From the NCBI RefSeq assembly GCF_000150275.1, contig NW_002060943.1, forward strand, positions 10,912,878 through 10,976,877: DNA of 64,000 nt, in the 5' to 3' direction. The position numbers were made by a program, and so were the translations under genes. Below, piece by piece: positions 19,620-44,834 of this stretch (its first letter is position 1; the number at the start of each line of letters is the position of its first letter). This DNA is from Trichoplax adhaerens. Its lineage: Eukaryota; Animalia; Placozoa. The notes beneath the pieces were generated by a model. It saw nothing but the letters and a program-made list of their open reading frames with translations. It was not told where the DNA came from and ran no database searches.

Positions 19620-21462
19620 CAGTCCATTGTACTGTACAATGTACTGTACCGTAGAGTGCATTTACTGTGCAGTACTGTACTGTACAGTACATACAGTACT
19701 GTAGAGTACAGTACTACAGTACATAAATCTCTATGGATACAGTACTGTCCAGTATCTTGCTTTACAAAACTTTCACTTTATACGGTACAGTATAGCGCAA
19801 TATTGCATAGTTGGCCAATATTGCTTCTCGAAACTATCCAAACTAGCGATAAAACTACTACGGTTGTGTTAGAAATGACCCGATCATTTTGCCGACTTTC
19901 ACTTAGGCTACTTTCAAAATGATCAAAATGAAATTTTATTCAATGTAGCTGTTAGTTTGCAGTTAGAGAGTACTGCACCACCATCTACTCATGGAAAAAA
20001 GTACTTTGGGCCCTATCATCGATATACTGTAGCATTGCCTACTATACCGTAAAAACGTAGCATGCTTGGACTGTGCCAACGACTAAGCATAGTGTACACT
20101 GTACTGTACACTCAGTTCTGTCTGGGCGCCAGATTTTAGGGGTTTCAGACCAGTGTTGCGCGAATATTGTATTGTAGAGTACAGTACAGTACTGTACAGT
20201 GTACAGTACTAAACGGCGACTAAAACGTGCATGTGCAAAGTACTGTACTGTACTGTACGATCATGGATTATTACGACTGTACACTGTACAGTACAGTACA
20301 ACTCATCAGGTAAGATTTCAGTACGCCGAGTGGTTGAATGATTGGACAGTACTGTACACTGTATAGTGTCAGCAGTCGGAGTTGGGAATGACGACTCATT
20401 GCGAGGACGCAGAAGACTACAGTGTACAGTATTTCGAAAAAAGAAATACTGTAAAGTACAGTACAGTACTGTACTGTACTGTACTGTATTTTGAAAAAGC
20501 TTTCTACTGTACTGTACAGTACTTTACTGTACTATACTGTACTGTACACTGTACTGTACAGTACAATGACAGCTCATTCCCAGGACGCAGAAGTACAGTA
20601 CTGTACATACTGTACAGTACGGTACTGTACTGTACAGTACAGTGTACAGTACAGTATTTCGAAAAAAGAAATATTTCATTCCCAGGACGCAGAAGACTAC
20701 TGTACAGTGTACAGTATTTTGAAAAAGCTTTGTACTGTACACTGTACAATGTCAGCAGCCGGAGTTGAGAATGACAACTCATTCCCAGGACACAGAAGAC
20801 TGTATTTGGAAAAAAGCTTTCTACTTTACTGTACAGCACAGTACTGTATAGTGCGGTGTCTCACAATTGTGAGCCACCGTAGTATAGTACAGTACTTCTC
20901 TCTCTCTTCTCCAGAGTATTGTGTACTGTACTAGAGAAGCTGTAATCGATACTTTCACACACGATTATACAGTACAGTATTTTAGCGTCCATCGTCAAAT
21001 ATACTGTACAGTGTACAGTGTACAGTACTTGGATTTCTGATAACAGCACATACAGTACAGTACAGTACAGTACTGTACGGTACTGTAACATTGCACAGGA
21101 CTACAGGTACTGTACAGTACAGTGATGAGTATGAGTAGAGTTAGTTAGCTCCAATCATTCTTGACTTCATAAGCGTTAACACACCCACATTGAGGCGTTG
21201 GTCAACTACAGTACAAAGCACTCTGTGAGCTGACAGTTTACTGTACTGTACTGTACTGTACTGTACCATACAGTACTGTACAGTACTGTACGCCAAAAGG
21301 GACCATTCAGTACTGTACTGTACACTGTAGTCCATCGTGATTAGCACGAAATGAAACCATTTCCACTGTCCATATTTTACCATCGTTACTGAAACATGTC
21401 CCCCTTTTGTACTGGACAGTAGGAAACAATGTACAATGTGCAGTGCAGCCATTGCATTGTAC
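19620..21462. repeat. Large TACTG/CAGTA/TGTACA palindrome-rich low-complexity island between the divergent CYC1 and GCSH genes
   Basis: Runs of (TACTG)n and (CAGTA)n in alternating orientation, joined by CAGTACTG/TGTACA palindromes. These give the spurious STV/YCT/QYS ORFs on both strands. Confidence 0.9.
20366..20828 (+). repeat. Four degenerate direct repeats (core TCATTCCCAGGACGCAGAAG...GTATTTnGAAAAAAG) with variable GTAC filler
   Basis: Cores at ~20396, ~20574, ~20676 and ~20779. Copies 1 and 4 share the leader TGTCAGCAGyCGGAGTTGrGAATGAC. The consensus can form the hairpin GGGAATGA-nnnn-TCATTCCC. Confidence 0.85.
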
Positions 21463-25785: not shown

Positions 25786-28700
25786 ATGGCTGAAATGAAG
25801 TTCATTTTTATCCTTTTACTGGCTCTAACCATCCAGGTATGAAATTCATAGTTAATTTTTACCTTCCATTGGGCAAATATTGCCAATGCTATTTTACGTT
25901 CTATATCAAAACTAACACTAATATATCATGCAATAGGTACAATTTAATTTTAATAAATTTGAGTATGGCATTAATTCAATTTTGCTTTCTGCGTATAACT
26001 ACTTCACAGAATTTTATATAGCATCATCATATAAATCCATAGGTCATTTCATTTGAGCTTGCAAGTAAATCTTTATTACTATTTTAATAAGAATTTAGTG
26101 TCCGTTTAATCCAATGTATAAAACAAAATTTATTTTACTTGTGTGACTTCTCGATTTCAAGCTCAATTAGCCAGCCTTCGTTTCTGTTTATATTGAAAAA
26201 TTTTTATAAAAAAGTTTTATCTAAGTGTCATTAATCAAAAATGACTGAACAATATTTTTCCTATTGATATTATTGTAATTTTAACTACTATTTCCGCGTA
26301 CGACTTCCTAACAAGCTATTTTTGGTTTACAGAGGTGATAAAATTATAACCAAAATTGATTACTTGAAATTTTTCTCCCGAATCTTGCAAATAGTAAACC
26401 TGTCCTACTATTTCATATTCGATATGTTATGGGCGGTATTATATCATAAGAAGGAAAACCTTTTTCATCGTGTCATTTCCACACTTGCCTAAATGATTAA
26501 CATAAAGCCATTAAAGACATAAAGGGACTGTCTATCTGTTCTTCATAAATAATATCTTTGTAACAGTATAGCTGTGGATCATAATGATAGTCTTGTTCAA
26601 GCAATATAAGCACTCTTAATAGACAAATAGAAACGCATTTCATAATATCATTTTCCAAAGTTGATCTCAACGACTTACATGAAGTAATTATAGTTTGAAG
26701 CTTAATTTCCTATTTTTCAGCGGCTGATATTCTATATCATTGTTCTACATAATAATCTATTATATCAGAATTCCTAGTAGTAACTTTACACTTGCAATAA
26801 ATTTAAAGCTGATTCATTACAATCGCATTTGAAAGTACTCGTTACAAACTGCCCCAAGGTAATATTTTACATTGGTTTACTTCACATTTTGTACCCTGAA
26901 TATAAACGTAATGTAAAGATATATCGTATTCGTACTCAATTTATTTTACAAAGACAGTACTTTACTAAGATCATCAAATGTTAAATATTTCATTTCTTAA
27001 CTTGATCTTCATCAAACGAATGGGTATAGTTATGAGCATAAAATATAAGAAACTTTTTCATACCAGGTTTGGTACTGAATTTAGCTATCGCTCCTAAAAG
27101 TAGGACGTCAATAGATAAATTCGCTTTTAACGCTAACAATTCAACGACGTTAATTTATGATGTCACCTTGTCTACAACTTGATTGAAAAAATTGATGAGC
27201 AAACTGATCAGTTGATCAATTTGCTCATCAATTTTTTCATACCAGTCAGTAGTACGTTTTCCTATTTAAGTAACCGAATTTAAATGAATATTGAAGCCAA
27301 AGAGCAAGATATCATGACGCAGTGTATGTAGTTTTATAACCGAACGGCACATTATTCTAGATACCTACCATATTGGTATTCTGTTTAAATGTAAAATATT
27401 GATATAAAAAATTTCGAGATTATAGTAGAAACGAAGAATATTTATTAATTTGTATCCGTATAGTCTAACTAACTGACTATTCGCCACATTAATTAGTGAA
27501 CTTTAAAATCAATTATTACGTTTCACTTTAGTTTCAATTATTTTTTCATTTTTGTTATAGAAAATAAATTATGATCGATAATAAATTGTAAATTACAGGT
27601 TTTATTCTTTATTAGTTATAGTTTACTGTTATGTGCTGTGAAAGTTGAAAGTGTATAAAGTTAAACTCTTTAAAATTGAATCAGTCGTTAGTTTGTGTCT
27701 ATTTATCCATCACTAGTAATAGGCATTTTAGATTGAATTAAGTAACATGAGGACGGTACTCAATTTCAATAAGAAGAGTATATACGTGTGTCCCTGTAAA
27801 ATAGCAATATCAATTATGACAGTCTTAAAAATAGTATGTCGCTTGAGGCACTTTGTATCGTCAGACAATACTTCAGAACAGTCTTGCTAAGTCTCATTAT
27901 ATTATCTATATTATAGTTGGGGGTTTCGAAGCTTTAACAAATCACGGGAAATAGAGCGTAAAATAAAATTTTCTTTCAACTATATCCTTAAATTTTTAAT
28001 TGAGATATTTGCCTGTGTTTCGAAACCTATTGAATTGTCAATGGCTTTACTTGTTTCGTACGGTAACCATCAATGAGAAGTTACGGTATCAAGTAATAAC
28101 TATATTGTAATATCATTAAATAAAGTGAAGAGAATGATACATTAATACCGCTATGATCGAAGACTTTTTTCATGTCTTTGTCGTACAAATGAGCCCTTGA
28201 TACTTCAACTATCCAAACATTTTAGCGATACTATGCATCACTTATCCAAGTTATCCAATGAAACATGATCGTGTTTGTCATAAAAGGTGTCTCACAATAA
28301 CTATCTTAGTCAAATGGTATTTTCTAAAAGGCTTTTATTACAAGGTTTCAGGAATAGTAGAGCAATAATTAATTACTACAAGAATCTAGTCTAAAATCTA
28401 AAGTGTTCCGAGCTCAAAGCAAAGTGAAGTCTCTTTCCCTAAAAGCTCATCTCTACAGTTCTTATATACATTTCGTTAAATCCATTTAATCTTCAATCAG
28501 ACATGAGTCATCAAGCAAAATATTTTCTCAAATAGCACATTACCTTCTACAATCTAAATCATTCTTCTTAAGATGTTACTACTCTTATATTAACGTCTAG
28601 CTCCTTTCGGAGTATTGCGACTTAATGGGCAAGACAAGATTTGTTACAGTAAAAGCATTTTGTAACTAATCGTATATAAATCGTGAATTTTGCTGTAAGA

Positions 28701-31700
28701 AGTAGATTGTCAGATAGTCAGATAGTCCTTGGTAGTTAGACGAACCTAACTTCTGTAATAAAGTGAAATTTGCAAGAAACTGTAGTTCTTGATTTATTGT
28801 TTTGAAGATCACTTTATCACAGGCACCTTAATAAGCCACAGTGTTTCTAGCCTCATAAGTCTTGTATCATAATTAGTCAACTGGCTAATATTAGTCATCA
28901 ACAATTTCTAATATAGTAGTTAACAATTATTTAATAGAAGCTTCGCAATATTATCTATTCAAAGTAACCTAACTATATCATATAGCCGTTTGCATAATCA
29001 AATATAGCTATTCTTATAATCAAATATGGGTGCATCACTACACTGTTATAGAGTAATATGCTTTGTTTTAAATTTTCGGATAGCTATGGAGCAATGCTGG
29101 ATTAATTCATGTAGAGAATAGTATTTTATAGTTATTAAGTATTGCTATCTAAATCGTATTTCGTATTTTATCTCCGGTAGATACATTTCAATTCTAATTC
29201 TAATTGTAACTTAACTATAGGTGAGCCACAGTCAAAATGTGACCGTCAGTAAACCAGTTTCGACACAAGGTAAGCGTTTAATTAAATCTTAGATTGGATT
29301 CTTTTCCTTGCTAAACAAAGGACCAAATGCTATATAGAGATCTTATTAGAAAGTGCAGAATAATCGCTATTTTTATACTACATAAAGCAAATAATAAGTT
29401 ATAACTTTAATGATAGCTTCATAATTCCTAGCTGTTATTTGCTGTAGTAGACAAATAATAAAGCAGAACTTGTCTGGAGTCCATATTTATCTAAGAATGA
29501 GTCTGACAATAAGTCTATTGGGCGCATTTATAAATCATCGATGCGAACAAGAAATATCAATCGAGCTTTTAGCTAACAATACTGATCCTTTCTGTTATCG
29601 ATAATATGCTAGGTACACAATCCCATTCTACAAATGTTACTGGTAACATACGTCCTACAAATGCTACAGGTAAAGAAATATTTGGTTAAAGCGAAAGGAA
29701 ATGCATAAATTATTTATGGGATTCTTTACATAATATGGACGTGCGATAGAATCAATATAAATGAATTGTTTCAGATACGGAATCAATTAATTGTAATTGC
29801 TAATTATCCTTCGTAGCTCCTAATGCTTGCATGTCAATGCCTTGTGTTAATGGTCGTTGTTACCATTGGACTTTCGGTAACCAATCCTACTACAAATGTT
29901 CATGTCAAAGTGGATACACAGGAGATCGTTGTGATACAGGTAAACTTAATTTTGGCTAAATAACTTTGTGCAAATGCTTAAAATTTAGAATTTGGGGCAA
30001 TTTACATCAAACATTTATTGATAATAAAATTTCATTTCAGTCTTTAAGTACTCGTATTGTGCCAATCATAATCCATGCTACCAAGGTCGATGTGTAGATA
30101 CAAATAATGGATATTCTTATCAATGCATCTGTTTCCAAGGATATACTGGAGCTACTTGCAATAACGGTAAGGCGGCTACAGTTTTTTTCAAATACTTTCT
30201 AAATTTATAAGCAATATCCTACGCTAAGTAAAATTTATTAAGCAAACAAATAGACAATAGTTCATAAAACAATTACTTTTCTCATCCAGCAAAAAATCGA
30301 ATTTTATTTTATTACTTTCATTATGCAAGACTAAGTATAGCAGATACAGCAATGCTAGCGTTAGAAAATTTTTATAAAGGACTAGCTTCTACCGTATAGT
30401 TATAATATGAAGGGACTATAAATTATTAAAGATAGACTTTGCTAAGGAGCCATCTTTTTAATGTGTATCAGCTTTAAATGGTGCTTCTTATCCTTGCGAT
30501 AAACGACCTTGCCGGGTTGGTCGTTGTATTAATGTACGTATTGGCTTAAAACTTTCATACATTTGCAACTGTAGCAAATATGACAACGATCCTTCCTGTT
30601 ACCGAGGTAAATATTGTTCAATATAAGACTAAATAATAAAAATTTAGGATCATAGCTATACGTAACCATAAGAGCGGATTTTTTGTAGCTAATTGTATCT
30701 CTATTGGTTTCGATATTTATACATTACGAGCACTTCTTCTATAAATTCAATGTTTGCCAACTATTTTAGAACTTTCACGACTTACAGATAAAGTTTACGC
30801 TTATTTTAGATCGTGCTTGTGGAAATCCATGTGCTGTTAGCGATCCTTGCATCAATGGAAAATGTAAATCTGATAATCATGGCGGCGTTTTCTGCACTTG
30901 TAACCCCGGGTTTACTGGACCTCGATGCCAGTGGTCTAGTAAGTTTAATACTTAAGAAAATGTCAAGTTAATTGTTAGACATTCATGAGGTTGTTGATTG
31001 GCGAACTAAATATGTCATGCTAATTTTTGTGTATAGGTGGAGTTACTCAAACACCATTTACAACTGCGTACGTATTATTTTAATTATCATGGAATTAATG
31101 CGTATTATTGATAATAATTATTAATCACGAGATATAGCTGGCATAAGTTTAGACAGAATAATTATTGACTTACTTGATACCATGCTATGCATTTACATAT
31201 AGCCTAATTTTAACGATAATTTTATCTAATTCCAGTTGATGGCACCTATTGCGTTTCTAATTTACTCTTATCCTAGCCTTAACCCTAAAATAGTAGTATT
31301 TACAAATGTATTACATTCGCTTTCTAGACGACCAACGATTCCTCAACAGATGCAAGTCTGTAAACCATATACCGGCTTCCTATGTAAACGTTATTTGGAA
31401 GGACGAAATATATATGTTGCTAATCATTCCATCATTGGTACTGAAGCTACCCTATTTACTGGACTATTTTATGGCCATGCTACTGGACTATTATCACCGA
31501 CTTGTCTCAAGGCAGTGTTACCAATAATTTGTACTACTTCGTACTCAGTATGCGACGGATCAAAACCTGCTCGTTTGTGCAGAGAGCAATGTCAACCCTT
31601 TTCCAATATTATACAAACTTGCTTAAAACGATTAGACCCTAATACAGTCGATTGCTCTAAGTTACCATCAATGAATAGTACTGGTATTAAGTGTAGTCCA

Positions 31701-34700
31701 ATCAAATTGCCACAACCTGATCAAGGTAAATAAATAAAATTAATTATAACATTCGATAATGAGAGATTATATTGTATTGTAGTATGTAATATCCAGCAGC
31801 TCGCTAGGACTTATTGCATCTCAATTTCAATATCAACATAGAGTCACACTGTTTAACTCAAAATAGTTCTTATGTGTTTCATAACTATTCGAAATTATCA
31901 TCTTCGTAAAGACTAACTACTTCATCTGTCTATATCTTCATATGTAGTGGCTCCACCAAATCCGCAGACTCAGTAAGTTAATTGAAAAAAATTTTTTATT
32001 AAATGTTTATAGTAGCTTACTCTATACAATCAATTTGTCTGCACTAGGTGACTAAACTAAGTTGCAAGGATCCCTTAACTACTATTGTTAATCGCTATTT
32101 GCTTACTTTCAAATCTGACAGGGTTGAATGCGTTTCTTATCAAGGAAGCCTTTGTAAAAATGCTCTACAAGGCTCCCAAATTGCCTTGTCATCTAACTTT
32201 CCGCAACAGCAAGTAGAAGAAGGTTTAGAAAAGATCATCAACTCTAATATGGCCATCAGTAAGGAATGTCGTGCTAAGCTAATTTCACCAATTTGTCGAG
32301 CGGCTTATGTAACATGTTCGCAAAATCGACCCGTTCGAGTATGCAGAAAGAGTTGTCAATCAGTTGCGACACTTATCCGTCAATGTATGCCCTATCCTGC
32401 TAGTCAAATGATACTACGATTCTGGAATTGCTCGAAATTTCCCGATATGAATTGTACTAATACTAATGCAGCTCCAATCGGTAAGAATTGCAGTAGAACG
32501 TGTTTTTTTGAGAAGTATCTAAACTGTATTTATCCTATGTAATAGAAAGATAATTATCTGTTGCAACGCTTTATAATTTGATTATATAATTGTTTCACAC
32601 GATCTAAATTTTCTATTTTCTATATTCTCTTGCATGTCCATTCATATATTAGTTAATTACGCATTAACTTATGCTTTTTAATTCATATATTGCCTACAGT
32701 ATAACAGTTACGTCAAGTCGCTTCTATGTTCACGCGATGGAGGCAATATCTTATACATAGTCCTATTTATTTTAGGTAACGGAACAATTCCTGTACGTCT
32801 AACCAATACTCACTTAAGGAATCAAGGTACCGTTGAAGTCTACGTCAACGGCCGTTGGGGAACTGTGTGCGACAAAAATTGGAACATGCACAACGCTATG
32901 GTAGTTTGTCGTCAGTTGGGCTTCAGTAAAGCACAAGCTGCTACTTGCTGTAATAAATTTGGTCAAAGCACAACATCATTCGCTCTTACTAATGTCTACT
33001 GCAAAGGTAACGAGCCTGGTCTTGGTTCATGTTTCCATAACGGATTTGGCAATGCTAATTGCTCTTCTGGGATGACTGCTGGAGTTATTTGTTCCAGTAA
33101 GTTAGAATATTGATCTATATTGAACAAATTACGACCTCTTTTATCGATCCTTTCTTCAGATATTTGAGAGTTGATTGTCGAAATAAAAATAATTAACAGC
33201 TGATATATAACGTAACCATCAATTCATAGGTACCACCAATAACACTAATAATTTGACTGATACGTCCACAAAAGATCCCATGACACAACCAATGCCTACG
33301 GGAACTATGAAGTAAGGACTATAGCGATTATAGTAATGTCATTTATTCCACAGTATACACTATTATAATCTTGACTTTCACGTAATCATGCTTGTTGATC
33401 TACTAGGAAAATAATTGATTAATAGTAATAATTATACATTTGCTTATTTGTTCCCAGCTTTAATATGACGACTATGAAACCGACGCAGATGATGACGATG
33501 GGACCAACACCATTTAATCCATCCAAACCCGGTCAGGCTGTTTGTGTTCAATATACCTCTACACTTTGTAACCCGTACTTGTTTACAAGTTCTATTGCCC
33601 AAATTGGATCTCGGGCTCCTCAAGATGAAGAAAGAAATATGGTATTGTCCATACTATTTGCACATGCTACCGGATCATTATCAGCTCAATGTATTCAGAG
33701 AATATTGCCATTTATGTGCGAAACGGCATTCCCTGAATGCTACAATAACCAATCATACTTCTTGTGCCGCGAAGACTGTCAAAGTCACAAGCCAACTGTT
33801 ATGGCATGTTTACAGAACATGCCTAATGTCCATCTTCCAAATTGTTCTCAACATCCTAGCCGCGCTAACAATGGCACATGTAATGATATCGTTAGCGATT
33901 CTACTGGTTGGTAACTATCTGTAATGAATCTTTTTCACTACCAATTTAGGATATCAATAATTGTTATTTCGATTTGCAGTTTCATAGTTATGCTATACAT
34001 ATACAATATTTTACCTATTATTCAGTAACTAATTCTTATAATTCAAATTTGTCTTCCATTTCTAGAAATGACACCAACAGCAACGTAAGTTTTAATCAGC
34101 CATTAAATAATTATGATTTAATGGTATAGTACATACTAGTTATATTATTTATCACTCTTCTGCAGCTACAAACTAATCAGGAACTGTAGTATATGGTTGC
34201 AAAAATTATAATTATCAAATAGCTTGGTCTTAATACAATATGTACGCGTATATTAGTTATAATCAGTTGACATATTAAAATCACAGTATTTCTTTAAAGT
34301 AGATATCCTATCGTCGAAAAGCATCAGTTGCCGACAGTCGTTTTGGATATCCATTTTATTATTTTGCTTAACACTCACCAGATAATTGCAAAATCTAACA
34401 TTCTAATCAAGCTCATAGTTTCAATTAAAATTTTTGCCGAAATAAGACTTCTTGTAAAATCGTAGTTGATAGTAGAAGACAAATCAGATATAGTTTAATG
34501 GACAGCTAATTAAGATTAATCGTGATTCCTTTTCCTTGGTCTTCGTAGAGCATCCATGTGTGTTCCATATCAAAGTGGCATTTGTTCTAATTTCTTCAAT
34601 CAAACCAATGTTACTATGATATCAAATGACCAATACCTTCCAAAGTCTCGCATCGAAGCCATTGCTAATGATCTTCTAGGTAGTGGAAGTGATCTATCAC

Positions 34701-37700
34701 ACGAATGCAAGAAGAGATTATTAGCTAGTTTTTGCGTGCTTAGTTATTCCCCTTGCCGAGGAGGCATGCCACGTAACTTATGCCGAAAAGATTGTATGGA
34801 AGCTATGCGTTTAGTTAAAGAATGTGTGCCTTATCCAGCTAGCAAAAGTGTAATTAAAATTTTTAATTGTGAGCGCTTTACCAATGCAACTTCAAAATGT
34901 ATAGCTGTCAATCAAAAGCCGATTCAAGGTATAAACAAGATTTTGATTCTATCAATTCAAAATTAATCTCATTGTAAAATAGTCGTTCAATACAATCTAA
35001 AGTAGTAATCTTAATTTCTTGATTGTAATATTTAGTAAATCTGCCTGATATTCGCCTTGTTGGTGGAAATTCAAGTAGAGAAGGTCGCGTTGAAATATAC
35101 CGAAACAGCACTTGGGGATCTATTTGCGGTCACAACTGGAATATCCAAGCTGCTAACATTGTATGCAAGCAATTAGGATACCATGGAGCACAAAGAACAG
35201 CCTGCTGCGGACAATTTGGTAATGGAACCGGTCATTATATGCTAAGTAATGTCCACTGTGAAGGCAACGAAAAACTTATTACTGACTGCTTTAATTCCGG
35301 AAATGGCATGATGTCCACCTGTAAGAGACCTGGTGAAGAAGCTGGCGTCGTCTGTAAGTCAATATCGCTAGGACTAAATAGGATTGATTTATCTTACGAA
35401 GACAAAATTACCGATACGTTTCTTAAAATTTTACTTCTAGGTAAAATGGACCCTACTACGCCTATGCCAACGTAATTACAGATTATATAGCAGCATGCGT
35501 AGAATCTTTTCGTTTTTGGCATACACAGTATTACATTCAGTTATAATTCAATTGTAAAGATTGGTTGTTAGTAGCTTGAAATTATAGTCCAACAGTTTAA
35601 ATTGATAATTGTAGTCGTTCTAATACTAGTCTTGCTTAAATTAATTTAGTGCAATTTTTTGTTTAGCACCATGAAACCTCCATCTCCTACATTTTCAAAC
35701 AACTTAATCTGTCGAGAATTTAAGCCAAGCTTTTGTAAAAAGTTCGTCAATCACACCAGTGTACTACAATTAGGATCACAATCGCCTGAAACTATGGAAG
35801 GACTAATTGCAACAAATACGTTCTACGCTCATTCATCTGGTTTAGTTACGAAACAATGTCTAGAAGTCCTTTTACGCTTTTCTTGCTTACAAGGATTCCC
35901 TCAATGTCATGGAAATAAAATCTATACCATATGTCAAGAAGACTGTAATGCTGCTTTACCTTATGTGCATAGCTGCTTAGCTAGGCTAAAGAATGCGTCA
36001 ACGACCATGCAGCTACCGTCATGTAAAAATGCGCCGAGTAGAAAGGCTGGCTACAAATATTGTATCTCACTACCAAATATGAATATACATATGAATAATA
36101 TGAGTGGCAATTCGACAGGTTAGATATGTATTTGTCTACTGTTAGGACAGCTTTTTATGATAATCAGTGAAACAGATTAAAAGATCTAAAACAGTTAATA
36201 TTTAAATGGTGCTATCATTAAATTACGGAGGACATTTGAATTTGCTATGCATTTGAGGATAGCTAATAACATTATATCTGATAGCATTGATGCAGTGGTT
36301 ACTTTTGGCATAGATTTCTAGAAGTACATAGTTCTAGAGTCTATGCTTTTGGTCATCACTTTTACCATTATTTAACCTTAGCCGCATAAAGAACAGCACA
36401 TGACTAGCAAAAGTAAATTCACTAATATTATAATATTATCTTTAAAAAAAAAATAGCTACTCCACCAACCGCACAACCAGCGTAAGTTTAATTTAATATC
36501 GTAGGCTTACCTCTGCATAATAAAGTAGCTATCTTTATAGCTCAATTTTGTCTAAATTGTACTTAAAGTGAAAATTATAAAGTAATTTATTATCGTAATT
36601 CTCTAATTTCTTAGACCGACATGTACAAAATATACCGGAAGTATTTGTAAACAAGTTTACAACACCACACAAATATCATCCTTAAATTTCTTGCCCCAAG
36701 AGAGCATCGAAAAGGACATAATGCGATTACTAGGAAATCCTAATAGTCTCTACCCTCCATGTCGTGAAAGAATCCTTAAAGCTCTTTGTGTAGCTTCGTT
36801 TGTTCCATGTAGAAATGGAACAGACCAAACTTTATGTCGCGAAGATTGTCAAAATCTGCTCGGATTATTGAAGAATTGTATACCAACACAGACTACTCTT
36901 TCTCTGTTGTCTGTCTGGAACTGCAGTATATTCCATCGCAGCAACAATACAAATGGAAGATGCAAGCCAATTAACATTAAGCCACTTGGAAGTAAGTCAT
37001 TTTCAATTTTAATGTAATCTCTGCGTATTGAAATGGCAAAGGCATTAATCTTACTACAATAGTTATAACTTTGTATTACAGTCTCAGATATAACGAAAAC
37101 AGAAGTTAATATACTGAATTCCTTGTACTCTGCTTATGCTCGTGATCACTTTTGTAAAATAATTGCTATTTCATTTACTACTATAATACAAAACTTAATA
37201 GACAACGATACAGCACCGGTTCGCTTAGTTGGCGGTAAGACACGCAATGAAGGAAGAGTGGAAGTTTATCGTTTCGGAAAGTGGGGAACTGTATGCGATT
37301 ATGGATTCGATATGAAAGATGCTAATGTAATTTGTAGACAACTTGGTTATGAAGGAGCTGAATCGTGGCGTTGTTGTGCTCAATACGGCAACGGTACTGG
37401 TCAAATTTGGCTATCTGGAGTTGATTGTAAAGGCAATGAAAAATCGATTGCTCAATGTCGCCATTACGGTTGGGGCAATACCAATCATTGTAACCATTTC
37501 AAAGATGTTGGAGTAAGATGCAAAGGTACGATTCCGTATGCTATTAAAAACGCCGGTGTCGGTTTCAGTATTTATAGTACATTCTATAGGATTATTAATA
37601 TAATTAAAATAGATATTACAATATATTTGTAATATAACCCTTAAGAGGTCTAAAGTATACTATAAATTCTAATGGATTGTAATTCTTCATATTTTCAGTT

Positions 37701-40700
37701 CCAGCACCAACATGTTTCCGACCACCACAAGGTAGTAAGATGTAGTAATTGATGTATTAATTTCATCGTTTGTGTTTCTATTTCTATTATTGAAAGCAAC
37801 GTCTAAATTTAGTTAGCATAACGATTCTTATAAGGTTCTTAGTTCTATGCCTAATGTAAAATGTGTTTAAATAGATTTCGCACTACCATGCGCTGGAAAT
37901 CCTTGCGGTCCTGGAAATCAATGCCAAAACGTTATGAATTACACCGCTTACATTTGCCACTGCAGTTACGGATTCTTTAATGGAAGGGGTTGTGTCGGAG
38001 GTATGTAGAAATAAATTGAAGCTTTTAAGAAGTCAAACATGAATATACTTGCATGGGCTTAAGCCCTTAATTGTTGACGTGGAGATGTCGAAAAAATTGA
38101 ATAGCAGACATATTTGACAACTGACGTTCTTAAAATTCTAAAAATAATGTTTAGGTATTCCGGTTACAAAAAACACTGTATCTTACTATTCTAGTCCGAA
38201 CAGACTAGAAGTTGGTGCAGCAATTAAATTCATCTGTACTGCTAAAGGTTTCCCAGCACCTAAAGTGGAAATTTACAGAAACGGAAAAATGATGAGAAAT
38301 AGCTCTGGCGTTGCAATCTATTCATCTAAACTCAATGATTACAGTACTCAAACAATATTGAAGTTCGATGCATTCTCTCATAACCACACCGGTATTTATG
38401 AATGCCGTGCTGGAAATCAATATAACAAGCAGCCAGTATCAATTAAAATACCAGTCGGTGCGTTTTACTTTCCTCTAGTATCTCTATACTATCAATGATA
38501 ATCAATGTAGGATTGAACAAGTCTCCTTTTCATCAATTTATATTCGATATTTTTTCCGTAGACATCAATGAATGTCTTACCAGCCCTTGCTCTCGGGGAG
38601 TCTGTATTAACACTATTGGATCGTTCAAATGCCAGTGTTTCCGAGGTTGGATGGGTAAACTCTGTAATCAAGGTAATTCAGAATAGATTGTGCATTCCAA
38701 TCTGAATATAAATTAGATATGACTGTTAATCAAAGTATTTACTTCAATAATATGAACTTATATGAATTTTGTAACTAATCATTTATCCTATGCAAGGTTG
38801 TGCCAACTTTGTTTCGTGCAATTATTTATTATTGATATTTATATCCCTTCCATCCATTTTAGACATTAACGAATGTAACTCACAGAAAAAGGTTTGCGAT
38901 CCAGATGCTAATTGTACCAACTACCCAGGTTCATTCTCATGCAAATGTAAACCAGGTTTTATTGGCAATGGATTTTCTTGTACAGGTAATAATGATATTA
39001 ATGAATCATTTCTTAATTAAAGTAACTATTATTATTTGCTTACACTTTGAGATGAAATGTGCTTAGTGTATAAGAATTGATTTTTTTGAATGTAGAAGTT
39101 CTTTTACAATATAAAAATTATTCCTGTAATTATGAATAACGATTATGTATTTTAATTGCGTGAAACAGAATTAAGACTCTATCCTTATGGGTACAAGTAC
39201 TTCGATAGAGCATTTGGCTATACCGATGATGGCTATCGTCGTTATAACCTGAAAGTTCCTGTATTCTTTATGAACAAATTTCAAAAAACAATTTACGTAA
39301 GTTTCACACGTTCGCAAGTCATTAGATAATTATAGTATAGGAACATTTCATAATCATTTGTACCATAAATGGCCTTATTAACATCGTAATCATCAAAAAT
39401 CTTTCTTATTCTGGTACATTCATTTATTAATAGGTATCTATGAATGGATTCGTTTCTCTTGGTAGACCATACTTTGGCTCACCACGCAATCCATTACCAT
39501 TAAACCGAAAAACAAGCATTATTGGACCATTTTATAGTGACGCTGATGGCCGAAATCCTGTAACAAGAGTCTACTTCCATCAGTATTATAGAGCTGATAG
39601 AAATCCGATTTCTACTGAAATATTAAAGCGAGCAACAATGGACGTAGCCAAATTTCAAGCCGCTTTAGCTAACGGCCAAAACGATACCAAAAACTTTGGA
39701 TTTTTCACTAAAGTTGTGCCTAACTTTGTTGCAAAACAAGTTATTATTGTTACCTGGTCAAAATTAGTACCTTATCCAGGCTTTATCAATTATAAATATA
39801 ATTCGGTAAGATACCTAGCTGTAGCAATACGTAACACTTATCGTGCAGTATACTGTAATATTTATTATTCTTATAATTAATTTAATAAATATCGCTGTTG
39901 ACATAGAATTTAAATTAATCATTTCTATACATAAGAGTGTTTAATTAATCATTCTCTTTACAATTTATAAATTAATATTTCCAGTTCAACACTTTCCAAC
40001 TTGTATTGGCTTCCAACGGCAATAATCTTTTTGGTTTCTTCGTTTATGAAGATGAAGGCATGAACTGGTGGAAGCGATTCCCTTACATTAGGCCCAAGAT
40101 TGGTTATACTAATTCGACACCATCGTATACTTATTTAGTACCCGGTTCTGATACTACTAGTGCATTAAGAGTTGATTCTATGATCGGTAATTTCAAAATG
40201 AGGGGTCGATATGGATTCCGTCTAGATGATTCAGCCATTGGACGTACTAATTACGAAGAGAAGTGCATGGAATGGTTTAATAATCAGCCATCACCAGAAA
40301 ATTATCTCATGGCTTTACGACGTCTATCGTGCCCATGTACTATCTTCCAAGCTCGACGAGACCGACGATTCCGTGTTGATTGGAGAACATACTGTGCAAG
40401 ATCATTTTTCCGGCGTGCATCAGATGGTGAAAGAGTAAGTTGACGTGGACTTGTACCATGCTTGCACAAAATAGTATATGGAAATTACTCTATAGCACTT
40501 CAAAATTCATCCCTTATATAATTTATTGATCAGTACTGAAACTATACGTTTACTTTAGTAAATCGACAAGGAGGTCATGTAAGCTTTATTAGAATTAATA
40601 ATATAATCAAGAGATAACTATAATATGATGAAATATTGATAGGTTCGCCAGCAATGCTGCTACCAGCGATTTAGACCAGGCTTTGGGGCATTGATCAGAC

Positions 40701-43700
40701 AACCACCGTTGGCGGTTTCATTTACTTTCAGGAATAGAACTTGGCGTAATGCCGAAGAAGAGGCGCGTCGCGATTGCTGTTTCAGATCGGGTTTATGTCG
40801 CTATTATTACGAAAAGATGCCATTCGATAACTGCCGTAACTACAGACCACCAAGAAGAGGTATTGTATAAGTAGAAGATATCTGCAAAGTGTATATTGAT
40901 TTTATTACTTCTGTACTATGTTATACAATGATTCATTCAACTATACAGTTCACCACTATAATTCTAGTTTTTGTTTAGTTTAGTTCAGTCATGCATTAAG
41001 CTTACTGTATGTAGTTATTTTAAAGGTAAAATTTTGATCACATTAGCTTGTGTTAAATATTTCGTGACTCCTTCTGAGTTCGTATCTGATCTTAGACAGC
41101 TTTTATGAAAAAAATTGCATATCATCTCGCTCACGATCATGTCGCCGAAACTAGACCGAGATAATAATAATGATGTCTTTTAATTTTAACTAGCACTTAT
41201 GTGGGGAGATCCTCATATTACTACCTTGGATACAAAAACGTACAGCTTTAACGGCCATGGCGAATACACCTTATTGGATGTCGACGGTGGCTTCTTCGTA
41301 TTACAAGGTCGTACCATGAGAGCTATACAAAATGGCTCTGCATCTGCATTAGCAACAGTTTTTGCATCATTTGCCTCAAAACAGAATGATTCCGATACCG
41401 TTGAAGCTAGCCTTAATAGCAATAGCGATGGAATTGATATTTATGTCAATAATAATAGTACTTCATTCTCCTTCAGTACCATTGGTGAAAATGATACCCT
41501 ATCGTATAACAACGTCGAACTGTCACGAACTATTGATAACAAATTAGTTATTGCATTTACAAGTGGTATTAACGTCGAAGTTCAACTATTAACAGAAATG
41601 TTAGCTATTACTTTTAGTGCACCAGATACCTATAAAGGCAATACTAAAGGTTTATTGGGTACATGGAATGATAATATTACTGATGATTTCAAGAGACCAG
41701 ATGGAACTTATTTGGACATCAATGCAAATGAATCTACTATCTTTTATAATTTTGGTCGACTCTGTAAGTTTATAAATTATAACGCTACGTAAATGTGGGA
41801 AACGTGTAAAAATTACATTTAGCAATTGTTCCATTTGTGTATTAGTGCGGTAATTAATTATTTGCCAATATATTAAGAGTAACAAATTAATCTATGTTAC
41901 TGTATACCGTCGTTGGATATTAGATTTGTCTTACTAATTTAATATGCGTAATACTTCAATCTAACAGGGCAAATAAATAGTGGAAGTTCACTTTTCACTT
42001 ATCCAGCTGGTACAACCGCAGCTAATTATAGTGATCCTAGCTTTGTTCCTATTTTTGCCGAGAATATCCCAGCATTGTTTGGCAATAACACCGCCTTTTA
42101 CCAACAATCCGTCAACGCATGTGGCAATGATACACAGTGCTTATATGATGCTGCATTGACTTTGAATTTGAATGCTGCAACAAGTGGCAAGAATGCTTCT
42201 AATGAATATCAGACAGGAAATACTGAATTAGAAAATTTCCCACCAACAATATCTGGCTTGGACTCTTACAATGTTACTTACGGCCAAGTATTCATGACTC
42301 AACTAAACGTTTCTGATGCTAATGCTGGTGATAATGTTACCGTAGTTTTAGTCAATCCACCACCCGGTGCTTACTTTGATAATATGACCATGGTATTCAA
42401 CTGGACAGTTTCAACTTATGACAACATCACTATCAAATTTGTAGCTACTGATTCAAAAGGAGCCAGTAGTGAATTATCACCATCAATAACGATGTGCTAT
42501 TGTGATAATAACAGCACATGCGATTACAATGCTGAATCAGTTGTTGTTAATGATATAACACAAATTTCTTGTACCTGTGACGCAGCTTGGACTGGTGATC
42601 ACTGCACTGAAGATTTAAATGAATGTGCTGATAGCCCTTGCTTTGCAAATGTCACTTGCACTGATAATCCAGCACCTCAATCTGGCTATGTTTGCAACGG
42701 TTGCCCGGCAGGTTACACTGGCGATGGACAAAAATGCTACGATATCGATGAATGTACTAATGGTACTAATTCATGCCAACAAACTTGTACCAATAATGAA
42801 GGAAGCTATACTTGCGGATGTAACAGTGGTTATATCTTACGTAATGATACTTATTCCTGCATGGATATTGACGAATGCATGAATGGCGATGCTAATTGTA
42901 GCTCATCAGCAACCTGCGTTAATACAGCAGGCTCATACCAATGTGTCTGTAGCTCCGGTTATATGTTAAGCAATGGAAATTGTACTGATATTGATGAGTG
43001 CGCTACTAATAATGGAGGCTGTAGCCAAGTATGCACCAATTCAGAAGGAAATTATACCTGTTCATGCTATAGCGGATTCACACTTGGTAGCAATAACCAT
43101 AATTGTACCGATGTTGACGAATGTACCCAGACATTACCTTGCCAACAAGTTTGTGTTAATACACAAGGTTCTTATTTCTGTGCCTGTAATCAAGGTTTCC
43201 AATTGAATGTTGACGGAAAATCATGTAATGGATCTATTAGTTGCAGCGCCAATCATACTTGCTCTTTTGGTTGTGCTGTTGTTAACGGAAAAGATACTTG
43301 CTATTGCGATCAAGGATATACTTTAGGCAGTGACAATAAAACTTGTGTCGATCTTAATGAATGTAATGGTAATGGTCAATTATGCCAACAAATTTGTGTT
43401 AATACCCCTGGAAGTTATCATTGCCAATGTAATTCAACGTATAAGCTTAAAGCTGATAAAATCAACTGTGAAGATATTGATGAATGTTTGAATAGCACTT
43501 CATGCCCAGCTACATCCAACTGTACTAATTCCATTGGTTCACATTCTTGTCAATGTTGGCCTGGTTATACTGGTGCACAATGTACTGATATTGACGAATG
43601 CTCTCAAGCCAACTCTTGCTCAAGCGATGCAACATGCAAAAATACTCCAGGCTCTTTTACTTGCTCTTGCAAGCTTGGATTTTTCGGTAATGGTACGACC

Positions 43701-44834
43701 TGCGAGGCCATTAAGCGTTATAATGCCAATGTTAGGCTTAATGGAACATTTACTAGTGATTTAACCAACAATAGCTCAGCACAGTTTATAGCCTTGAAGC
43801 AACAGGTTGAAACTAGTCTTAATACTATTTACTCAAATAATGCTAATACTAGCAGTACATTTAAGACTGTACAAGTTACTGAATTTAAAAATGGTAGCAT
43901 TATAGCTGATTATATTATATTAATAGCTGCGACTAGTAGTGTATCTACATCACAGTTACAATCTGCTATACCAGCGGCTTCAACTATTGGTGGCTATACA
44001 ACATTACAACAAGCAGTAGTAGTCGACTTTAATGAATGCGCTAATCCGGCTGACAATAATTGTACAAGCTTGCAAGATTGTGTCAATACCGCTGGCTCGT
44101 ACAGATGTCAATGTAAAACTGGATATACTGGACAGTTTGAAAGTTGTACCGACATTAACGAATGTCTTGGATCTCCATGCCCGACCAATGCCAACTGCGC
44201 TAACACCATAGGATCCTTTACTTGTACTTGCCATGTAGGCTATACCGGAGCAACATGTACAGATATCAATGAATGCTTAACAGCACAATGTCCTGCTGAT
44301 TCAAACTGCGTCAATACAGCTGGATCCTACAGATGCCAATGCAACACCGGGTATATCAATCAATCCAATACATGCAACGATATTAACGAATGTGCTAGAA
44401 ACCCTTCGCCATGTACATCCAGCAATAATCGATGCGTCAATACCAAGGGTTCATATACTTGTAGTTGCGCACCCGGTTACAGAGGATCTGCCAATAACTG
44501 TACTTGTATGTTAAACTGCTTAAATGGAGGTACATGCCAAGTTGCTAATGGAACGGCTACATGTAACTGCATCAATGGCTATAGAGGAATTACATGTAAT
44601 GTGGCTGGTGATATGCCTACAGGTGCCATTGTTGGAATATCGGTTGGAACTGTTGCTGGTATACTGTTAATTATTGCTATTATAGTTATTATTAGCAAGA
44701 GCGGACGTGGTAAACGTATTGGACCAGGAATGTGTGGTGCAGAAAATCCTGGCTTTGTACAAGAAAACCAAGAGTTGCATGAAACTGGGCGCAAAAATCG
44801 AAATATGGATGAAGAAAATGAAATGCAAGCTTAA
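25786..44834 (+). CDS. Giant mosaic type I membrane protein (MUC4/SUSD2-type core): SP-EGFx4-[FZ-FZ-SRCR]x3-EGF-Ig-cbEGFx2-NIDO-AMOP-VWD-EGFx10-SEA-EGFx5-TM-tail; 33 exons, ~3,186 aa
   Basis: Signal-peptide exon 25786-25836 ([17 protein letters not shown]|VSHS). All 33 GT-AG exons chain in compatible phase and sum to 9,561 nt, a multiple of 3, ending at TAA 44832-44834. Domains were recognised from cysteine spacing and motifs: GRVEVY..WGTVCD (SRCR), NTFQLVLAS (NIDO), QQCCY..DCC..C.NYRPP (AMOP), [13 protein letters not shown] (VWD), FKNGSII (SEA). A single transcript is inferred from phase continuity, not shown. Confidence 0.82.
27184..27239. repeat. Near-perfect 56-bp inverted repeat in intron 1 of the mosaic gene
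   Basis: TGAAAAAATTGATGAGCAAACTGATCA-GT-TGATCAATTTGCTCATCAATTTTTTCA: 27-bp arms, one mismatch. Confidence 0.9.
31328..37525 (+). other. Three tandem FZ-FZ-SRCR modules (six 10-Cys ROR/MuSK-type Frizzled CRDs, three SRCR domains)
   Basis: FZ exons 31328-31725, 32122-32480, 33458-33906, 34549-34928, 35667-36118, 36615-36991 (pattern C..Y.G..C...C...C...C...LCREDC...C...C...C). SRCR exons 32776-33096, 35036-35353, 37202-37525. Confidence 0.8.
39169..41763 (+). other. NIDO-AMOP-VWD block with GDPH motif (41205-41216)
   Basis: [96 protein letters not shown]; domain order as in MUC4. Confidence 0.88.
43708..44022 (+). other. SEA domain with GSII cleavage motif (43893-43904)
   Basis: Cys-free ~105 aa insert between EGF arrays: [38 protein letters not shown]...[17 protein letters not shown]. 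Confidence 0.85.

What the first reader, a model, noticed from the sequence alone, without database searches (positions are those of the whole stretch)
25786..44834. Candidate novel receptor: MUC4-type membrane protein fused to six Frizzled CRDs and three SRCR domains
Seen: 33 phase-compatible exons run from one signal peptide to one TM helix, encoding EGFx4-[FZ-FZ-SRCR]x3-EGF-Ig-cbEGFx2-NIDO-AMOP-VWD-EGFx10-SEA-EGFx5-TM (~3,186 aa). No internal stop or second signal peptide is needed. Known: NIDO-AMOP-VWD-EGF-TM is the MUC4/SUSD2/Mesh-type core for epithelial surfaces and adhesion; FZ-CRDs bind Wnt or lipids; SRCRs bind microbial and other ligands; FZ and SRCR co-occur in corin. I know no described protein with this full combination. 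A ligand-binding array sits where MUC4 has its PTS mucin repeat. Inference: a tall, sheddable surface sensor or trap linking lipid/Wnt-type ligand capture and pattern recognition at an epithelium (for example feeding, microbe sensing or morphogen sequestration). Automated annotation would probably split it into several genes.
Basis: partly seen in the sequence, partly recalled or inferred. Interest (0 to 1): 0.85.

Follow-up and report, generated by a model that had tools for sequence, protein, structure and literature searches.

The report
Placozoan MUC4-like receptor with Frizzled/SRCR array
This is a real, expressed and conserved gene of the placozoan Trichoplax: a giant single-pass surface protein with a mucin-4-type stalk carrying three repeats of two Frizzled-type domains plus one scavenger-receptor domain. 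The design is uncommon but not unique, because lancelets have a similar Frizzled-array version.

Summary
On the + strand, 25786-44834 encodes one gene.

The domain order is exactly as described:
- SP-EGFx4-[Fz-Fz-SRCR]x3-EGF-Ig-cbEGFx2-NIDO-AMOP-VWD(GDPH)-EGFx10-SEA-EGFx5-TM-tail

Evidence for a single, conserved gene:
- RNA contigs from three studies splice without a break from Fz5/Fz6 through SRCR3, NIDO and VWD into the last exon. One contig is 10.1 kb, the size of the whole mRNA, so the "two genes" refutation fails.
- Genomic contigs of two other placozoan lineages keep the same exon order from Fz1 to the stop codon. Across the exons compared, Fz3 to the last exon, dN/dS is 0.04-0.20.
- A paralogue in the same genome also combines Fz, SRCR and NIDO-AMOP-VWD.

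The novelty claim is only partly right:
- The C-terminal core belongs to the widespread "mucin-like protein"/MUC4 family.
- SRCR plus this core occurs in several phyla.
- Two Branchiostoma proteins carry 8 and 15 Fz domains on the same core. Their Fz domains form a separate clade, so that array was probably built independently.
- I found no paper describing such proteins.

Both Fz subtypes fold like MuSK/ROR2 CRDs, which lack the Wnt-lipid groove. Wnt or lipid capture is therefore unsupported.

Most likely this is a sheddable apical ligand-binding or scavenger glycoprotein. The scan holds no earlier finding of this on other DNA.

The parts
25786..25836 (+). Exon 1. ATG plus the hydrophobic signal-peptide start ([17 protein letters not shown]); phase 0 donor GTATGA.
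   Evidence: Sequence read. Inferred, not covered by the reads laid. Consistent with the 3,590 nt that RNA contig X7 holds upstream of 36615.
26043..26064 (+). Putative exon 2 (22 nt, phase 0 to 1) completing the signal peptide (VISFELA). It is followed by a 3.75-kb intron.
   Evidence: Gene-finder script and frame check. This is the weakest part of the model.
29817..30938 (+). Four EGF exons (29817-29939, 30041-30166, 30472-30606, 30810-30938), all phase 1-1.
   Evidence: Pfam EGF hits (the third EGF-like exon gave no hit). Splice candidates.
31037..33096 (+). Triad 1: linker micro-exon 31037-31067, Fz1 (type A) 31328-31725, linker micro-exon 31948-31972, Fz2 (type B) 32122-32480, SRCR1 32776-33096.
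   Evidence: Pfam. From Fz1 onward it is collinear and conserved in L007; exon 31037-31067 lies upstream of L007 and is inferred from splice logic only.
33230..35353 (+). Triad 2: linker exon 33230-33311, Fz3 33458-33906, 19-nt linker exon 34066-34084, Fz4 34549-34928, SRCR2 35036-35353.
   Evidence: Pfam. Conserved in L005 and L007, including the micro-exon splice sites.
35441..37525 (+). Triad 3: linker exon 35441-35471, Fz5 35667-36118, linker exon 36457-36481, Fz6 36615-36991, SRCR3 37202-37525.
   Evidence: Pfam. RNA joints 36991|37202, and 36118|36457|36615 through the loose end. L005 conservation.
37699..38985 (+). 33-nt linker exon 37699-37731, EGF 37875-38000, Ig 38155-38457, cbEGF 38562-38672, cbEGF 38863-38985.
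   Evidence: RNA joints in three runs. Pfam Ig_3/I-set and EGF_CA hits (the EGF-like exon 37875-38000 gave no hit).
39169..41763 (+). MUC4-type core: NIDO (39169-39296, 39434-39805, 39985-40434), AMOP (end of 39985-40434 plus 40643-40859), VWD beginning WGDPH (41194-41763).
   Evidence: RNA joints. Pfam NIDO and VWD, with a partial AMOP hit. GDPH motif.
41968..44834 (+). Last exon (954 codons plus stop). It holds an unassigned region of about 175 aa (the paralogue's equivalent hits He_PIG), EGF x10, SEA with the G|SIIA motif, EGF x5, a TM helix, and a 45-aa tail with a conserved NPGF. Stop codon at 44832-44834.
   Evidence: Pfam. Translation. RNA joint 41763|41968. Orthologue P0257 is 80% identical.

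Best explanation
One gene of Trichoplax adhaerens encodes a type I membrane glycoprotein of about 3,158 aa that belongs to the placozoan-expanded MUC4-like ("mucin-like protein") family.

Shown:
- It is transcribed as one spliced mRNA of about 10 kb.
- Its exon order is kept in two other placozoan lineages, and the exons compared from Fz3 to the last exon are under purifying selection.
- The membrane-proximal part is the family's standard NIDO-AMOP-VWD(GDPH)-EGF-SEA-EGF-TM stalk.
- The N-terminal part is three copies of a five-exon, phase 1-1 cassette: linker, Fz type A, linker, Fz type B, SRCR.

Inferred:
- The protein sits on an epithelial apical surface.
- It is cut autocatalytically at GDPH and/or at the SEA G|S site into non-covalently held subunits.
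- It presents a tall, N-glycosylated array of six MuSK/ROR-type Fz CRDs and three 8-cysteine (group B-like) SRCR domains. These domains carry the GRVEV/GTVEV/GRVEI...W segment that I recall as the bacteria-binding site of DMBT1.
- The array captures particulate or macromolecular ligands such as microbes, food-film components or matrix proteins.
- Bound material could then be shed with the outer subunit, or taken up through the conserved NPGF motif in the tail.

Confidence by part: about 0.95 that it is a single gene with this architecture, and about 0.4 for the scavenger/shedding function.
For: - Domains.
- One spliced RNA in runs X5, X7 and X14 from three studies, with 12 GT..AG joints over 36615-42400 and a 10,105-nt contig.
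- The RNA-confirmed exons give an open frame of 2,008 codons ending in a TM helix and a tail.
- The full 32-exon model is open.
- Orthologous contigs L005 and L007 are collinear with the window. dN/dS was computed against L005 only (Fz3 to the last exon) and is 0.04-0.20.
- Micro-exon splice sites are conserved.
- The Fz domains have 10 invariant cysteines.
- Both Fz subtypes take the Fz-CRD fold.
- Family placement among proteins named mucin-like protein or mucin-4.
- GDPH, the SEA G|SIIA motif and the NPGF tail motif are conserved in the orthologue.
- The SRCR domains have 8 cysteines, are single-exon, and carry a GRVEV/GTVEV/GRVEI motif.
- A placozoan "mucin 4-like glycoprotein" with VWD, SRCR and EGF domains is reported in upper-epithelial metacells and proposed as a glycocalyx component: PMC12013895.
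- Placozoan SRCR receptors are described as expanded, with domain combinations mostly restricted to the phylum: PMC6321704.
Against: - No ligand, cleavage, localisation or cell type was tested for this gene.
- The gene described in PMC12013895 may be one of at least 15 paralogues rather than this one.
- Exons 1-2 and the long second intron are inferred only.
- The AMOP hit is partial and below Pfam's cut-off, because the domain is split by an intron.
- The DMBT1-type motif is a general SRCR consensus, and its role is recalled from memory.
- NPGF as an uptake signal is a guess from NPxY/NPxF motifs.
Confidence: 0.6

Rival explanations
1. It is a membrane-tethered Wnt sink or co-receptor. The six Fz CRDs would bind placozoan Wnts, as sFRPs, ROR or MuSK do, and so shape or relay Wnt signals at the epithelium. 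The MUC4-type stalk would only position and shed them.
For: - There are six genuine Fz-CRD folds, conserved under purifying selection.
- PMC11219042 reports that the ROR2 CRD still binds WNT5A weakly and independently of lipid.
- The same Fz-array-on-MUC4-core design recurs in amphioxus, which suggests the pairing has a function.
Against: - The nearest structural class (MuSK, ROR2) lacks the palmitoleate groove.
- The Fz domains score near Pfam's cut-off and are divergent.
- The SRCR, Ig and EGF partners, and the family context, point to surface binding or defence rather than signalling.
- No Wnt binding was tested.
Confidence: 0.15
2. It is a cell-cell or cell-matrix adhesion or junction component, like Drosophila Mesh (NIDO-AMOP-VWD in smooth septate junctions) or SUSD2. 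The Fz/SRCR/Ig/EGF array would act as a homophilic or heterophilic adhesive face.
For: - It shares the NIDO-AMOP-VWD core with those families.
- It has Ig and many cbEGF domains.
- Its tail is conserved.
Against: - The closest relatives are named mucin-like or mucin-4, not Mesh or SUSD2.
- GDPH and the SEA cleavage motif fit sheddable apical proteins.
- The roles of Mesh and SUSD2 are recalled from memory, not tested here.
Confidence: 0.15
3. Two adjacent genes, an Fz/SRCR gene and a MUC4-like gene, have been wrongly joined, or the RNA contigs are chimeric assemblies.
For: Contigs assembled from short reads can in principle chain neighbouring transcripts (caveat stated).
Against: - Every junction from 36118 to 41968 is a spliced GT..AG joint in the same frame, in three runs from three studies.
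- There is no stop codon, second signal peptide or polyadenylation gap in between.
- The linker exon 37699-37731 between SRCR3 and the EGF exon is 90% identical in the orthologue.
Confidence: 0.02

Closest known systems
MUC4 and the invertebrate "mucin-like protein" family (NIDO-AMOP-VWD-EGF-TM)
   Same: NIDO, VWD with GDPH, EGF arrays, a single TM helix and a short tail. The best non-placozoan sequence relatives carry these names. SEA is present in many invertebrate members.
   Different: There is no PTS tandem-repeat mucin domain, only Pro/Thr linkers of 6-27 aa. An Fz/SRCR array sits in its place. The C8-3_MUC4 Pfam model was not hit in this gene at E <= 0.01.
Branchiostoma uncharacterized proteins XP_066276376.1 (3,573 aa) and XP_078670161.1 (6,305 aa)
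   Same: Repeated Fz domains lie N-terminal of the NIDO/VWD(GDPH) core with one C-terminal TM helix; for XP_066276376.1 Pfam confirms NIDO, VWD, C8-3_MUC4 and EGF and the Fz domains come in pairs. This is the same overall design.
   Different: In XP_066276376.1 the third unit of the repeat is SEA, not SRCR, and it carries a thyroglobulin-1 domain and no Ig. Its eight Fz domains form their own clade (100/100), and on the NIDO/AMOP tree both proteins lie outside the placozoan group. The array was therefore probably assembled independently.
Trichoplax adhaerens paralogue on G000:C1378 at about 320-339 kb, and the other placozoan family members (for example "Mucin-like protein, partial" of Trichoplax sp. 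H2, P0003)
   Same: The same core. The C1378 gene also has Fz pairs, SRCR, EGF-Ig-EGF and NIDO-AMOP-VWD. P0003 has SRCR x4 plus the core plus SEA.
   Different: The C1378 gene has a different domain order (Fz-Fz-SRCR...SRCR x3...Fz-Fz) and a 118-aa Ser/Thr-rich stretch. P0003 and several others lack Fz. Several paralogues lie in intron-free open frames of 1,500-1,800 aa.
Corin (Fz-LDLa-Fz-LDLa-SRCR-protease)
   Same: It is the best-known protein that combines Fz and SRCR domains on one membrane protein (from memory).
   Different: Corin is type II with a serine-protease domain and LDLa repeats. None of these are present here.
DMBT1 / SRCR group B scavenger proteins
   Same: Single-exon, 8-cysteine SRCR domains with the GRVEV...W segment. 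One placozoan paralogue is even named DMBT1 by NCBI.
   Different: There are only three SRCR domains, no CUB or ZP domains, and the protein is membrane-anchored through a MUC4-type stalk.
MuSK and ROR2 Fz-CRDs
   Same: They are the best structural matches of both Fz subtypes (TM 0.62-0.70).
   Different: There is no kinase or Kringle domain. Sequence identity is about 20%.

Membership tests
MUC4-type / mucin-like protein family | NIDO domain | tested here: met
   PF06119 on two exons, E 2.8e-10 and 1.5e-11, covering profile positions 5-104 and 101-185.
MUC4-type / mucin-like protein family | AMOP domain between NIDO and VWD | tested here: inconclusive
   PF03782 hits only profile positions 2-44, at 23.1 bits against a cut-off of 25. 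The next exon alone gives no hit. The domain is split by an intron, and the joined protein was not searched.
MUC4-type / mucin-like protein family | VWD domain with the GDPH autocleavage motif | tested here: met
   PF00094, E 6e-15. WGDPH lies at the start of the domain and is conserved in the orthologue. Cleavage itself is not testable here.
MUC4-type / mucin-like protein family | EGF domains, one C-terminal TM helix, short cytoplasmic tail | tested here: met
Mucins in the strict sense | Long Pro/Thr/Ser-rich tandem-repeat (PTS) domain | tested here: not met
   Only seven short P/T-rich linker exons of 19-82 nt. The paralogue on C1378 has a 118-aa S/T-rich stretch.
Frizzled-type CRD (Pfam Fz) | Ten conserved cysteines and the Fz-CRD fold | tested here: met
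   Nine cysteine columns are invariant and the tenth is conserved in at least 90% of 14 domains. Pfam E 9e-7 to 7e-9, with three of six below the 32.1-bit cut-off. AF2 models have pLDDT 78 and 82, and the top Foldseek hits are all Fz-CRDs. Atlas score 0.92.
Frizzled-type CRD (Pfam Fz) | Open hydrophobic groove that binds the Wnt palmitoleate | not tested
   Only the fold class is known. The nearest structures are MuSK and ROR2, which lack the groove according to PMC11219042.
Frizzled receptors / sFRP | 7TM bundle (Frizzled) or NTR domain (sFRP) after the CRD | tested here: not met
   No such Pfam hits in any exon.
SRCR group B | SRCR domain with 8 cysteines encoded by one exon | tested here: met
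   PF00530, E 1e-25 to 1e-31. Eight cysteines each; in SRCR2 the eighth Cys codon spans the splice site (read from the sequence). Each SRCR domain is a single exon.
SEA-domain autoproteolytic proteins | SEA domain with a G|S[VI][VI] cleavage motif | tested here: met
   PF01390, E 3e-11. FKNG|SIIADY is conserved in the orthologue, paralogues and amphioxus proteins. Cleavage is not testable here.
Corin-like proteases | Trypsin-like protease domain and LDLa repeats | tested here: not met
   Absent from all exon scans.

The most novel reading that the evidence does not exclude
Fz-array mucin-like proteins are a distinct receptor class that has gone unrecognised and arose at least twice, in Placozoa and in Cephalochordata. 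In this class, paired Frizzled-type CRDs on a sheddable MUC4-type stalk act as an apical sink or sensor for Wnt-type or other lipid-modified or CRD-binding ligands. In the placozoan version this is coupled to SRCR pattern recognition. That would make it an early link between morphogen handling and surface defence in an animal without nerves or gut.
Probability: 0.12. Interest if true: 0.8.

Novelty: new variant of a known kind. Interest (0 to 1): 0.55.

Why it matters
- It documents, with RNA and cross-species evidence, a 3,158-aa placozoan surface protein. Its ligand-binding head, six Frizzled-type CRDs and three SRCR domains, replaces the mucin repeat of a MUC4-type protein.
- It shows how the head was built. 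A symmetrical phase 1-1 cassette of five exons was triplicated before the sampled placozoan lineages split.
- A similar Fz-array head sits on the same stalk in amphioxus, probably built independently. This hints that the pairing has a function.
- The gene offers a concrete candidate for how placozoan epithelia bind microbes, food or signalling proteins.
- It gives a natural set of non-receptor Fz CRDs for testing what MuSK/ROR-type CRDs bind.

Tried and rejected
- **Annotated model of this gene.** I looked for one with phmmer on the NIDO/AMOP exon, with the last exon, and with a paralogue's NIDO-VWD region over lengths of 1,430-4,550 aa. No 100%-identical protein appeared. Self records seem to be withheld, so the claim that annotation would split the gene is untested.
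- **First gene-finder run.** It over-predicted micro-exons in the 3.75-kb intron and split Fz exons. I kept only exons backed by conservation, by analogy between the triads, or by RNA.
- **First model.** It had a TGA at a direct Fz3-Fz4 junction. The orthologue showed the true donor at 33906 and a conserved 19-nt exon.
- **Literature.** The supplements of PMC6321704 do not mention Frizzled, NIDO or AMOP. The supplement of PMC12013895 gives no gene id for its "mucin 4-like" gene. The sponge aggregation-factor paper and the red-coral skeletome paper list Fz and NIDO proteins separately, not fused.
- **Common origin of the amphioxus and placozoan Fz arrays.** The two trees argue against it. However, they lack outgroups and rest on 130-150 columns.
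- **Joined (spliced) protein.** It was never sent to any search, family or fold tool. It was only checked for frame, stops and simple counts inside local scripts. This is why AMOP stays inconclusive.
Full report
**Organism and setting**

The window is G000:C1414:10912878-10976877 of a 105.6-Mb assembly in 1,414 contigs. Earlier notes of this scan call the genome Trichoplax adhaerens. This fits the results: the closest protein relatives are named Trichoplax adhaerens or Trichoplax sp. H2, and GC content is about 32% with short introns. No other ORF of 60 aa or more lies between 26021 and 31236 on either strand.

**Observation**

Stop-free + strand stretches between 29804 and 44831 are cysteine-rich.
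- EGF x4
- Fz, Fz, SRCR, three times over
- EGF, Ig, EGF_CA x2
- NIDO on two exons
- the start of AMOP
- VWD
- a 954-codon last exon with EGF_CA/cEGF arrays and SEA

The six Fz hits have E-values of 9e-7 to 7e-9, but their scores sit at the curated cut-off (29.9-36.7 against 32.1 bits). I therefore tested them further:
- An alignment of 14 such domains (six from the window, four from the orthologue, four from the paralogue) has ten conserved cysteine columns, nine invariant and one in at least 90% of sequences.
- The ESM Atlas places Fz6 next to Fz clusters at 0.92.
- The AlphaFold2 model of a type B domain (Fz6, pLDDT 77.8) and of a type A domain (Fz5, pLDDT 81.6) hit Fz-CRD structures almost exclusively in the PDB. 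MuSK (3hkl) and ROR2 (9fse) come first, followed by Frizzled 4, 5, 7 and 8 and Smoothened.

**One gene or two**

I laid contigs of four public runs on 36500-42400. Three runs from three studies (X5, on record as RNA-seq; X7; X14) each have a contig that lies spliced over the whole stretch. The GT..AG joints are:
- 36991|37202
- 37525|37699 and 37731|37875, which reveal a 33-nt exon
- 38000|38155
- 38457|38562
- 38672|38863
- 38985|39169
- 39296|39434
- 39805|39985
- 40434|40643
- 40859|41194
- 41763|41968

The loose end upstream of 36615 matches a 25-nt exon at 36457-36481 preceded by the last bases of the Fz5 exon.

The X7 contig is 10,105 nt long. It extends 3,590 nt 5' of 36615 and 2,948 nt 3' of 42400.

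Joined in a local script only, the RNA-confirmed exons from 36457 to 44834 form an open frame of 2,008 codons. It ends with a TM helix, a 45-aa tail and the stop codon at 44832-44834.

**The 5' half**

I had no reads left for the 5' half, so I built the model from three sources:
- splice logic;
- the parallel exon structure of the three triads;
- conservation in other placozoans.

A direct Fz3-Fz4 junction gave a TGA codon. The orthologue showed the real donor at 33906 and a conserved 19-nt exon at 34066-34084.

The final model has 32 exons, all with GT..AG introns, a CDS of 9,477 nt and 3,158 aa with no internal stop. Its exons up to 36481 sum to 3,476 nt. This fits the 3,590 nt in the X7 contig and leaves about 114 nt of 5' UTR.

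Exon 1 (25786-25836) encodes [17 protein letters not shown]. Exon 2 (26043-26064) is the least certain part of the model.

Each triad is a five-exon cassette with the same phases:
- linker exon (phase 1 to 2)
- Fz type A (2 to 1)
- linker exon (1 to 2)
- Fz type B (2 to 1)
- SRCR (1 to 1)

The cassette as a whole is phase 1-1. The linker exons encode Pro/Thr-rich peptides such as [14 protein letters not shown] and KMDPTTPMP.

**Conservation**

The last exon found a Logan ORF at 80% identity (P0257). Its contigs L005 (14,567 nt) and L006 are genomic DNA of another placozoan. L005 is collinear with the window from 33458 to the stop codon. It holds Fz3, Fz4, SRCR2, Fz5, Fz6, SRCR3, the linker exons, EGF, Ig, cbEGF x2, NIDO, AMOP, VWD and the last exon.

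Comparison of the exons with L005 shows:
- Every exon is open.
- Amino-acid identity is 62-90%.
- dN/dS is 0.04-0.20, with synonymous sites near saturation.

The Fz1 exon found P0375 at 73% identity. It lies on an ENA contig, L007, that is collinear with 31325-33807 and holds Fz1, Fz2, SRCR1, a linker block and Fz3. L007 is only about 70% identical to L005 where the two overlap, so it comes from a third lineage. The linker exons keep their AG and GTAAGT borders in these contigs. The array of six Fz and three SRCR domains on the MUC4-type core is therefore older than the split of these lineages.

**Paralogues and family**

The genome holds at least 15 loci with the NIDO/AMOP exon. Several of them lie in intron-free open frames of 1,500-1,800 aa.

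Fz domains of this type occur outside the gene mainly on C1378 at 322-330 kb, upstream of a NIDO/AMOP exon at 334.7 kb on the same strand. That locus reads as follows:
- EGF x2, Fz, Fz, SRCR
- EGF x2, SRCR
- EGF x4, SRCR
- EGF x2, SRCR
- Fz, Fz
- a 118-aa Ser/Thr-rich stretch
- EGF, Ig, EGF and further EGF-like exons
- NIDO, AMOP, VWD, He_PIG
- EGF and further EGF-like exons

Whether that locus is a single gene was not tested.

Other family members are annotated "Mucin-like protein", "Fibrillin-2" or "Deleted in malignant brain tumors 1 protein" in Trichoplax sp. H2. They carry SRCR, MAM or EGF heads without Fz.

Outside Placozoa, the 120 best relatives of the NIDO-AMOP-VWD region are mostly named mucin-like protein, mucin-4 or uncharacterized protein. 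They span corals, annelids, echinoderms, hemichordates, molluscs, amphioxus and vertebrates. None lists Pfam Fz. A few list SRCR: Acropora palmata, Amphiura, Ruditapes and Mercenaria.

**The amphioxus counterpart**

I searched all 375 fetched proteins locally with an HMM built from the Fz alignment. Only two proteins besides the Fz1 orthologue hit:
- P0019, Branchiostoma lanceolatum XP_066276376.1, 3,573 aa;
- P0015, a Branchiostoma hybrid, XP_078670161.1, 6,305 aa.

Pfam on P0019 gives Fz x8 (433 bits), SEA x4, thyroglobulin-1, NIDO, VWD, C8-3_MUC4 and EGF_CA. Read with the Fz coordinates, the order is [Fz-Fz-SEA] x4 ahead of the core. Both proteins have GDPH and one C-terminal TM helix, and P0015 has a signal peptide.

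Two trees bear on whether the arrays share an origin:
- On a tree of the NIDO/AMOP exon (192 rows), the placozoan genes form one group (SH-aLRT 88-94). The amphioxus Fz proteins lie elsewhere, next to proteins that include two from the annelid Owenia. Well-supported branches force at least two origins of the Fz label.
- On a tree of Fz domains, the eight amphioxus domains form their own clade, separated from all placozoan ones (100/100). The placozoan domains fall broadly into type A (Fz1, 3, 5) and type B (Fz2, 4, 6), though these groupings are only weakly supported. Each domain pairs with its orthologue.

Neither tree has outgroups and both are short. Independent assembly of the arrays is the better reading, but it is not proven.

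**Function**

Shown:
- the architecture;
- transcription as one mRNA;
- purifying selection on the exons compared with L005, Fz3 to the last exon;
- conservation in the orthologue of WGDPH at the start of VWD, of FKNG|SIIADY in SEA, and of a tail with NPGF.

The SRCR domains have 8 cysteines, are encoded by single exons, and carry GRVEV/GTVEV/GRVEI...W. From memory, this is the segment that binds bacteria in DMBT1.

The Fz domains resemble MuSK and ROR2 CRDs most closely. PMC11219042 reports that these CRDs lack the hydrophobic groove that holds the Wnt palmitoleate, although ROR2 still binds WNT5A weakly. Wnt-lipid capture is therefore not supported, but lipid-independent binding of Wnts or other proteins is not excluded.

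Two papers give context:
- PMC6321704 describes 45 SRCR receptors in Trichoplax sp. H2 with domain combinations mostly restricted to the phylum, and does not mention Frizzled.
- PMC12013895 reports a "mucin 4-like glycoprotein" with VWD, SRCR and EGF domains in upper-epithelial metacells of three placozoan species and proposes it as a glycocalyx component. Which paralogue that is remains unknown.

I therefore favour a sheddable apical ligand-binding or scavenger glycoprotein. A Wnt sink and a junctional adhesion protein are the rivals.

**Novelty and score**

I found no paper describing a NIDO-AMOP-VWD protein with Fz domains. The core is a known, widespread family. SRCR heads on this core occur elsewhere, and an Fz-array head exists in amphioxus predictions. 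The exact Fz-Fz-SRCR triad on this core was seen only in placozoans. This makes it a new variant of a known kind and not a new kind of system: well supported as a gene, moderately surprising, and with an open and testable function.

**Limits**

- Exons 1-2 are inferred.
- Run and organism names are coded, so the species behind L005 and L007 are unknown.

Noticed in passing
G000:C1378:320000-339000 (loci L001, L003, L002): A second gene-sized locus in the same genome combines Fz x4, SRCR x4, a 118-aa Ser/Thr-rich stretch (L003:7756-8109), Ig, NIDO-AMOP-VWD and He_PIG, all on one strand. It is a paralogue with a different domain order, and no RNA check was made.
   Followed up: partly
P0019 and P0015 (Branchiostoma XP_066276376.1, XP_078670161.1): Amphioxus proteins annotated as uncharacterized carry 8 and 15 Fz domains, interleaved with SEA, on a MUC4-type NIDO-VWD(GDPH)-EGF-TM core. 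The neighbouring Fz copies are nearly identical, which points to recent tandem amplification.
   Followed up: partly
G000:C1412:3992626, C1406:13649, C1412:3927412, C1409:4295314: The closest paralogues of the NIDO/AMOP exon (54-57% identity) lie inside uninterrupted open frames of 1,539-1,820 aa, whereas this gene has 32 exons. They may be intron-poor or retro-copied family members.
   Followed up: no
G000:C1409:4677457-4698751: Five weak Pfam Fz hits lie on one strand within 21 kb, with another at 4800357. This may be a further multi-Fz gene or a gene cluster.
   Followed up: no
window 44700-44831 and the C-terminus of P0257: The 45-aa cytoplasmic tail is about 80% identical between the two placozoans and contains a conserved NPGF, an NPxF/NPxY-like motif that may be an endocytosis or PTB-binding signal.
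   Followed up: partly
window 19628-21291: Arrays of degenerate pentanucleotide repeats (TACTG/CAGTA, periods 5, 10, 15 and 24) sit in the most GC-rich part of the window. They give long open frames on both strands that are not genes.
   Followed up: partly
window 26065-29816: The putative second intron is 3.75 kb, about ten times the usual intron length of this gene. It is AT-rich (GC 0.29-0.32) and has no ORF of 60 aa or more on either strand. It could hold regulatory sequence or missed small exons.
   Followed up: no
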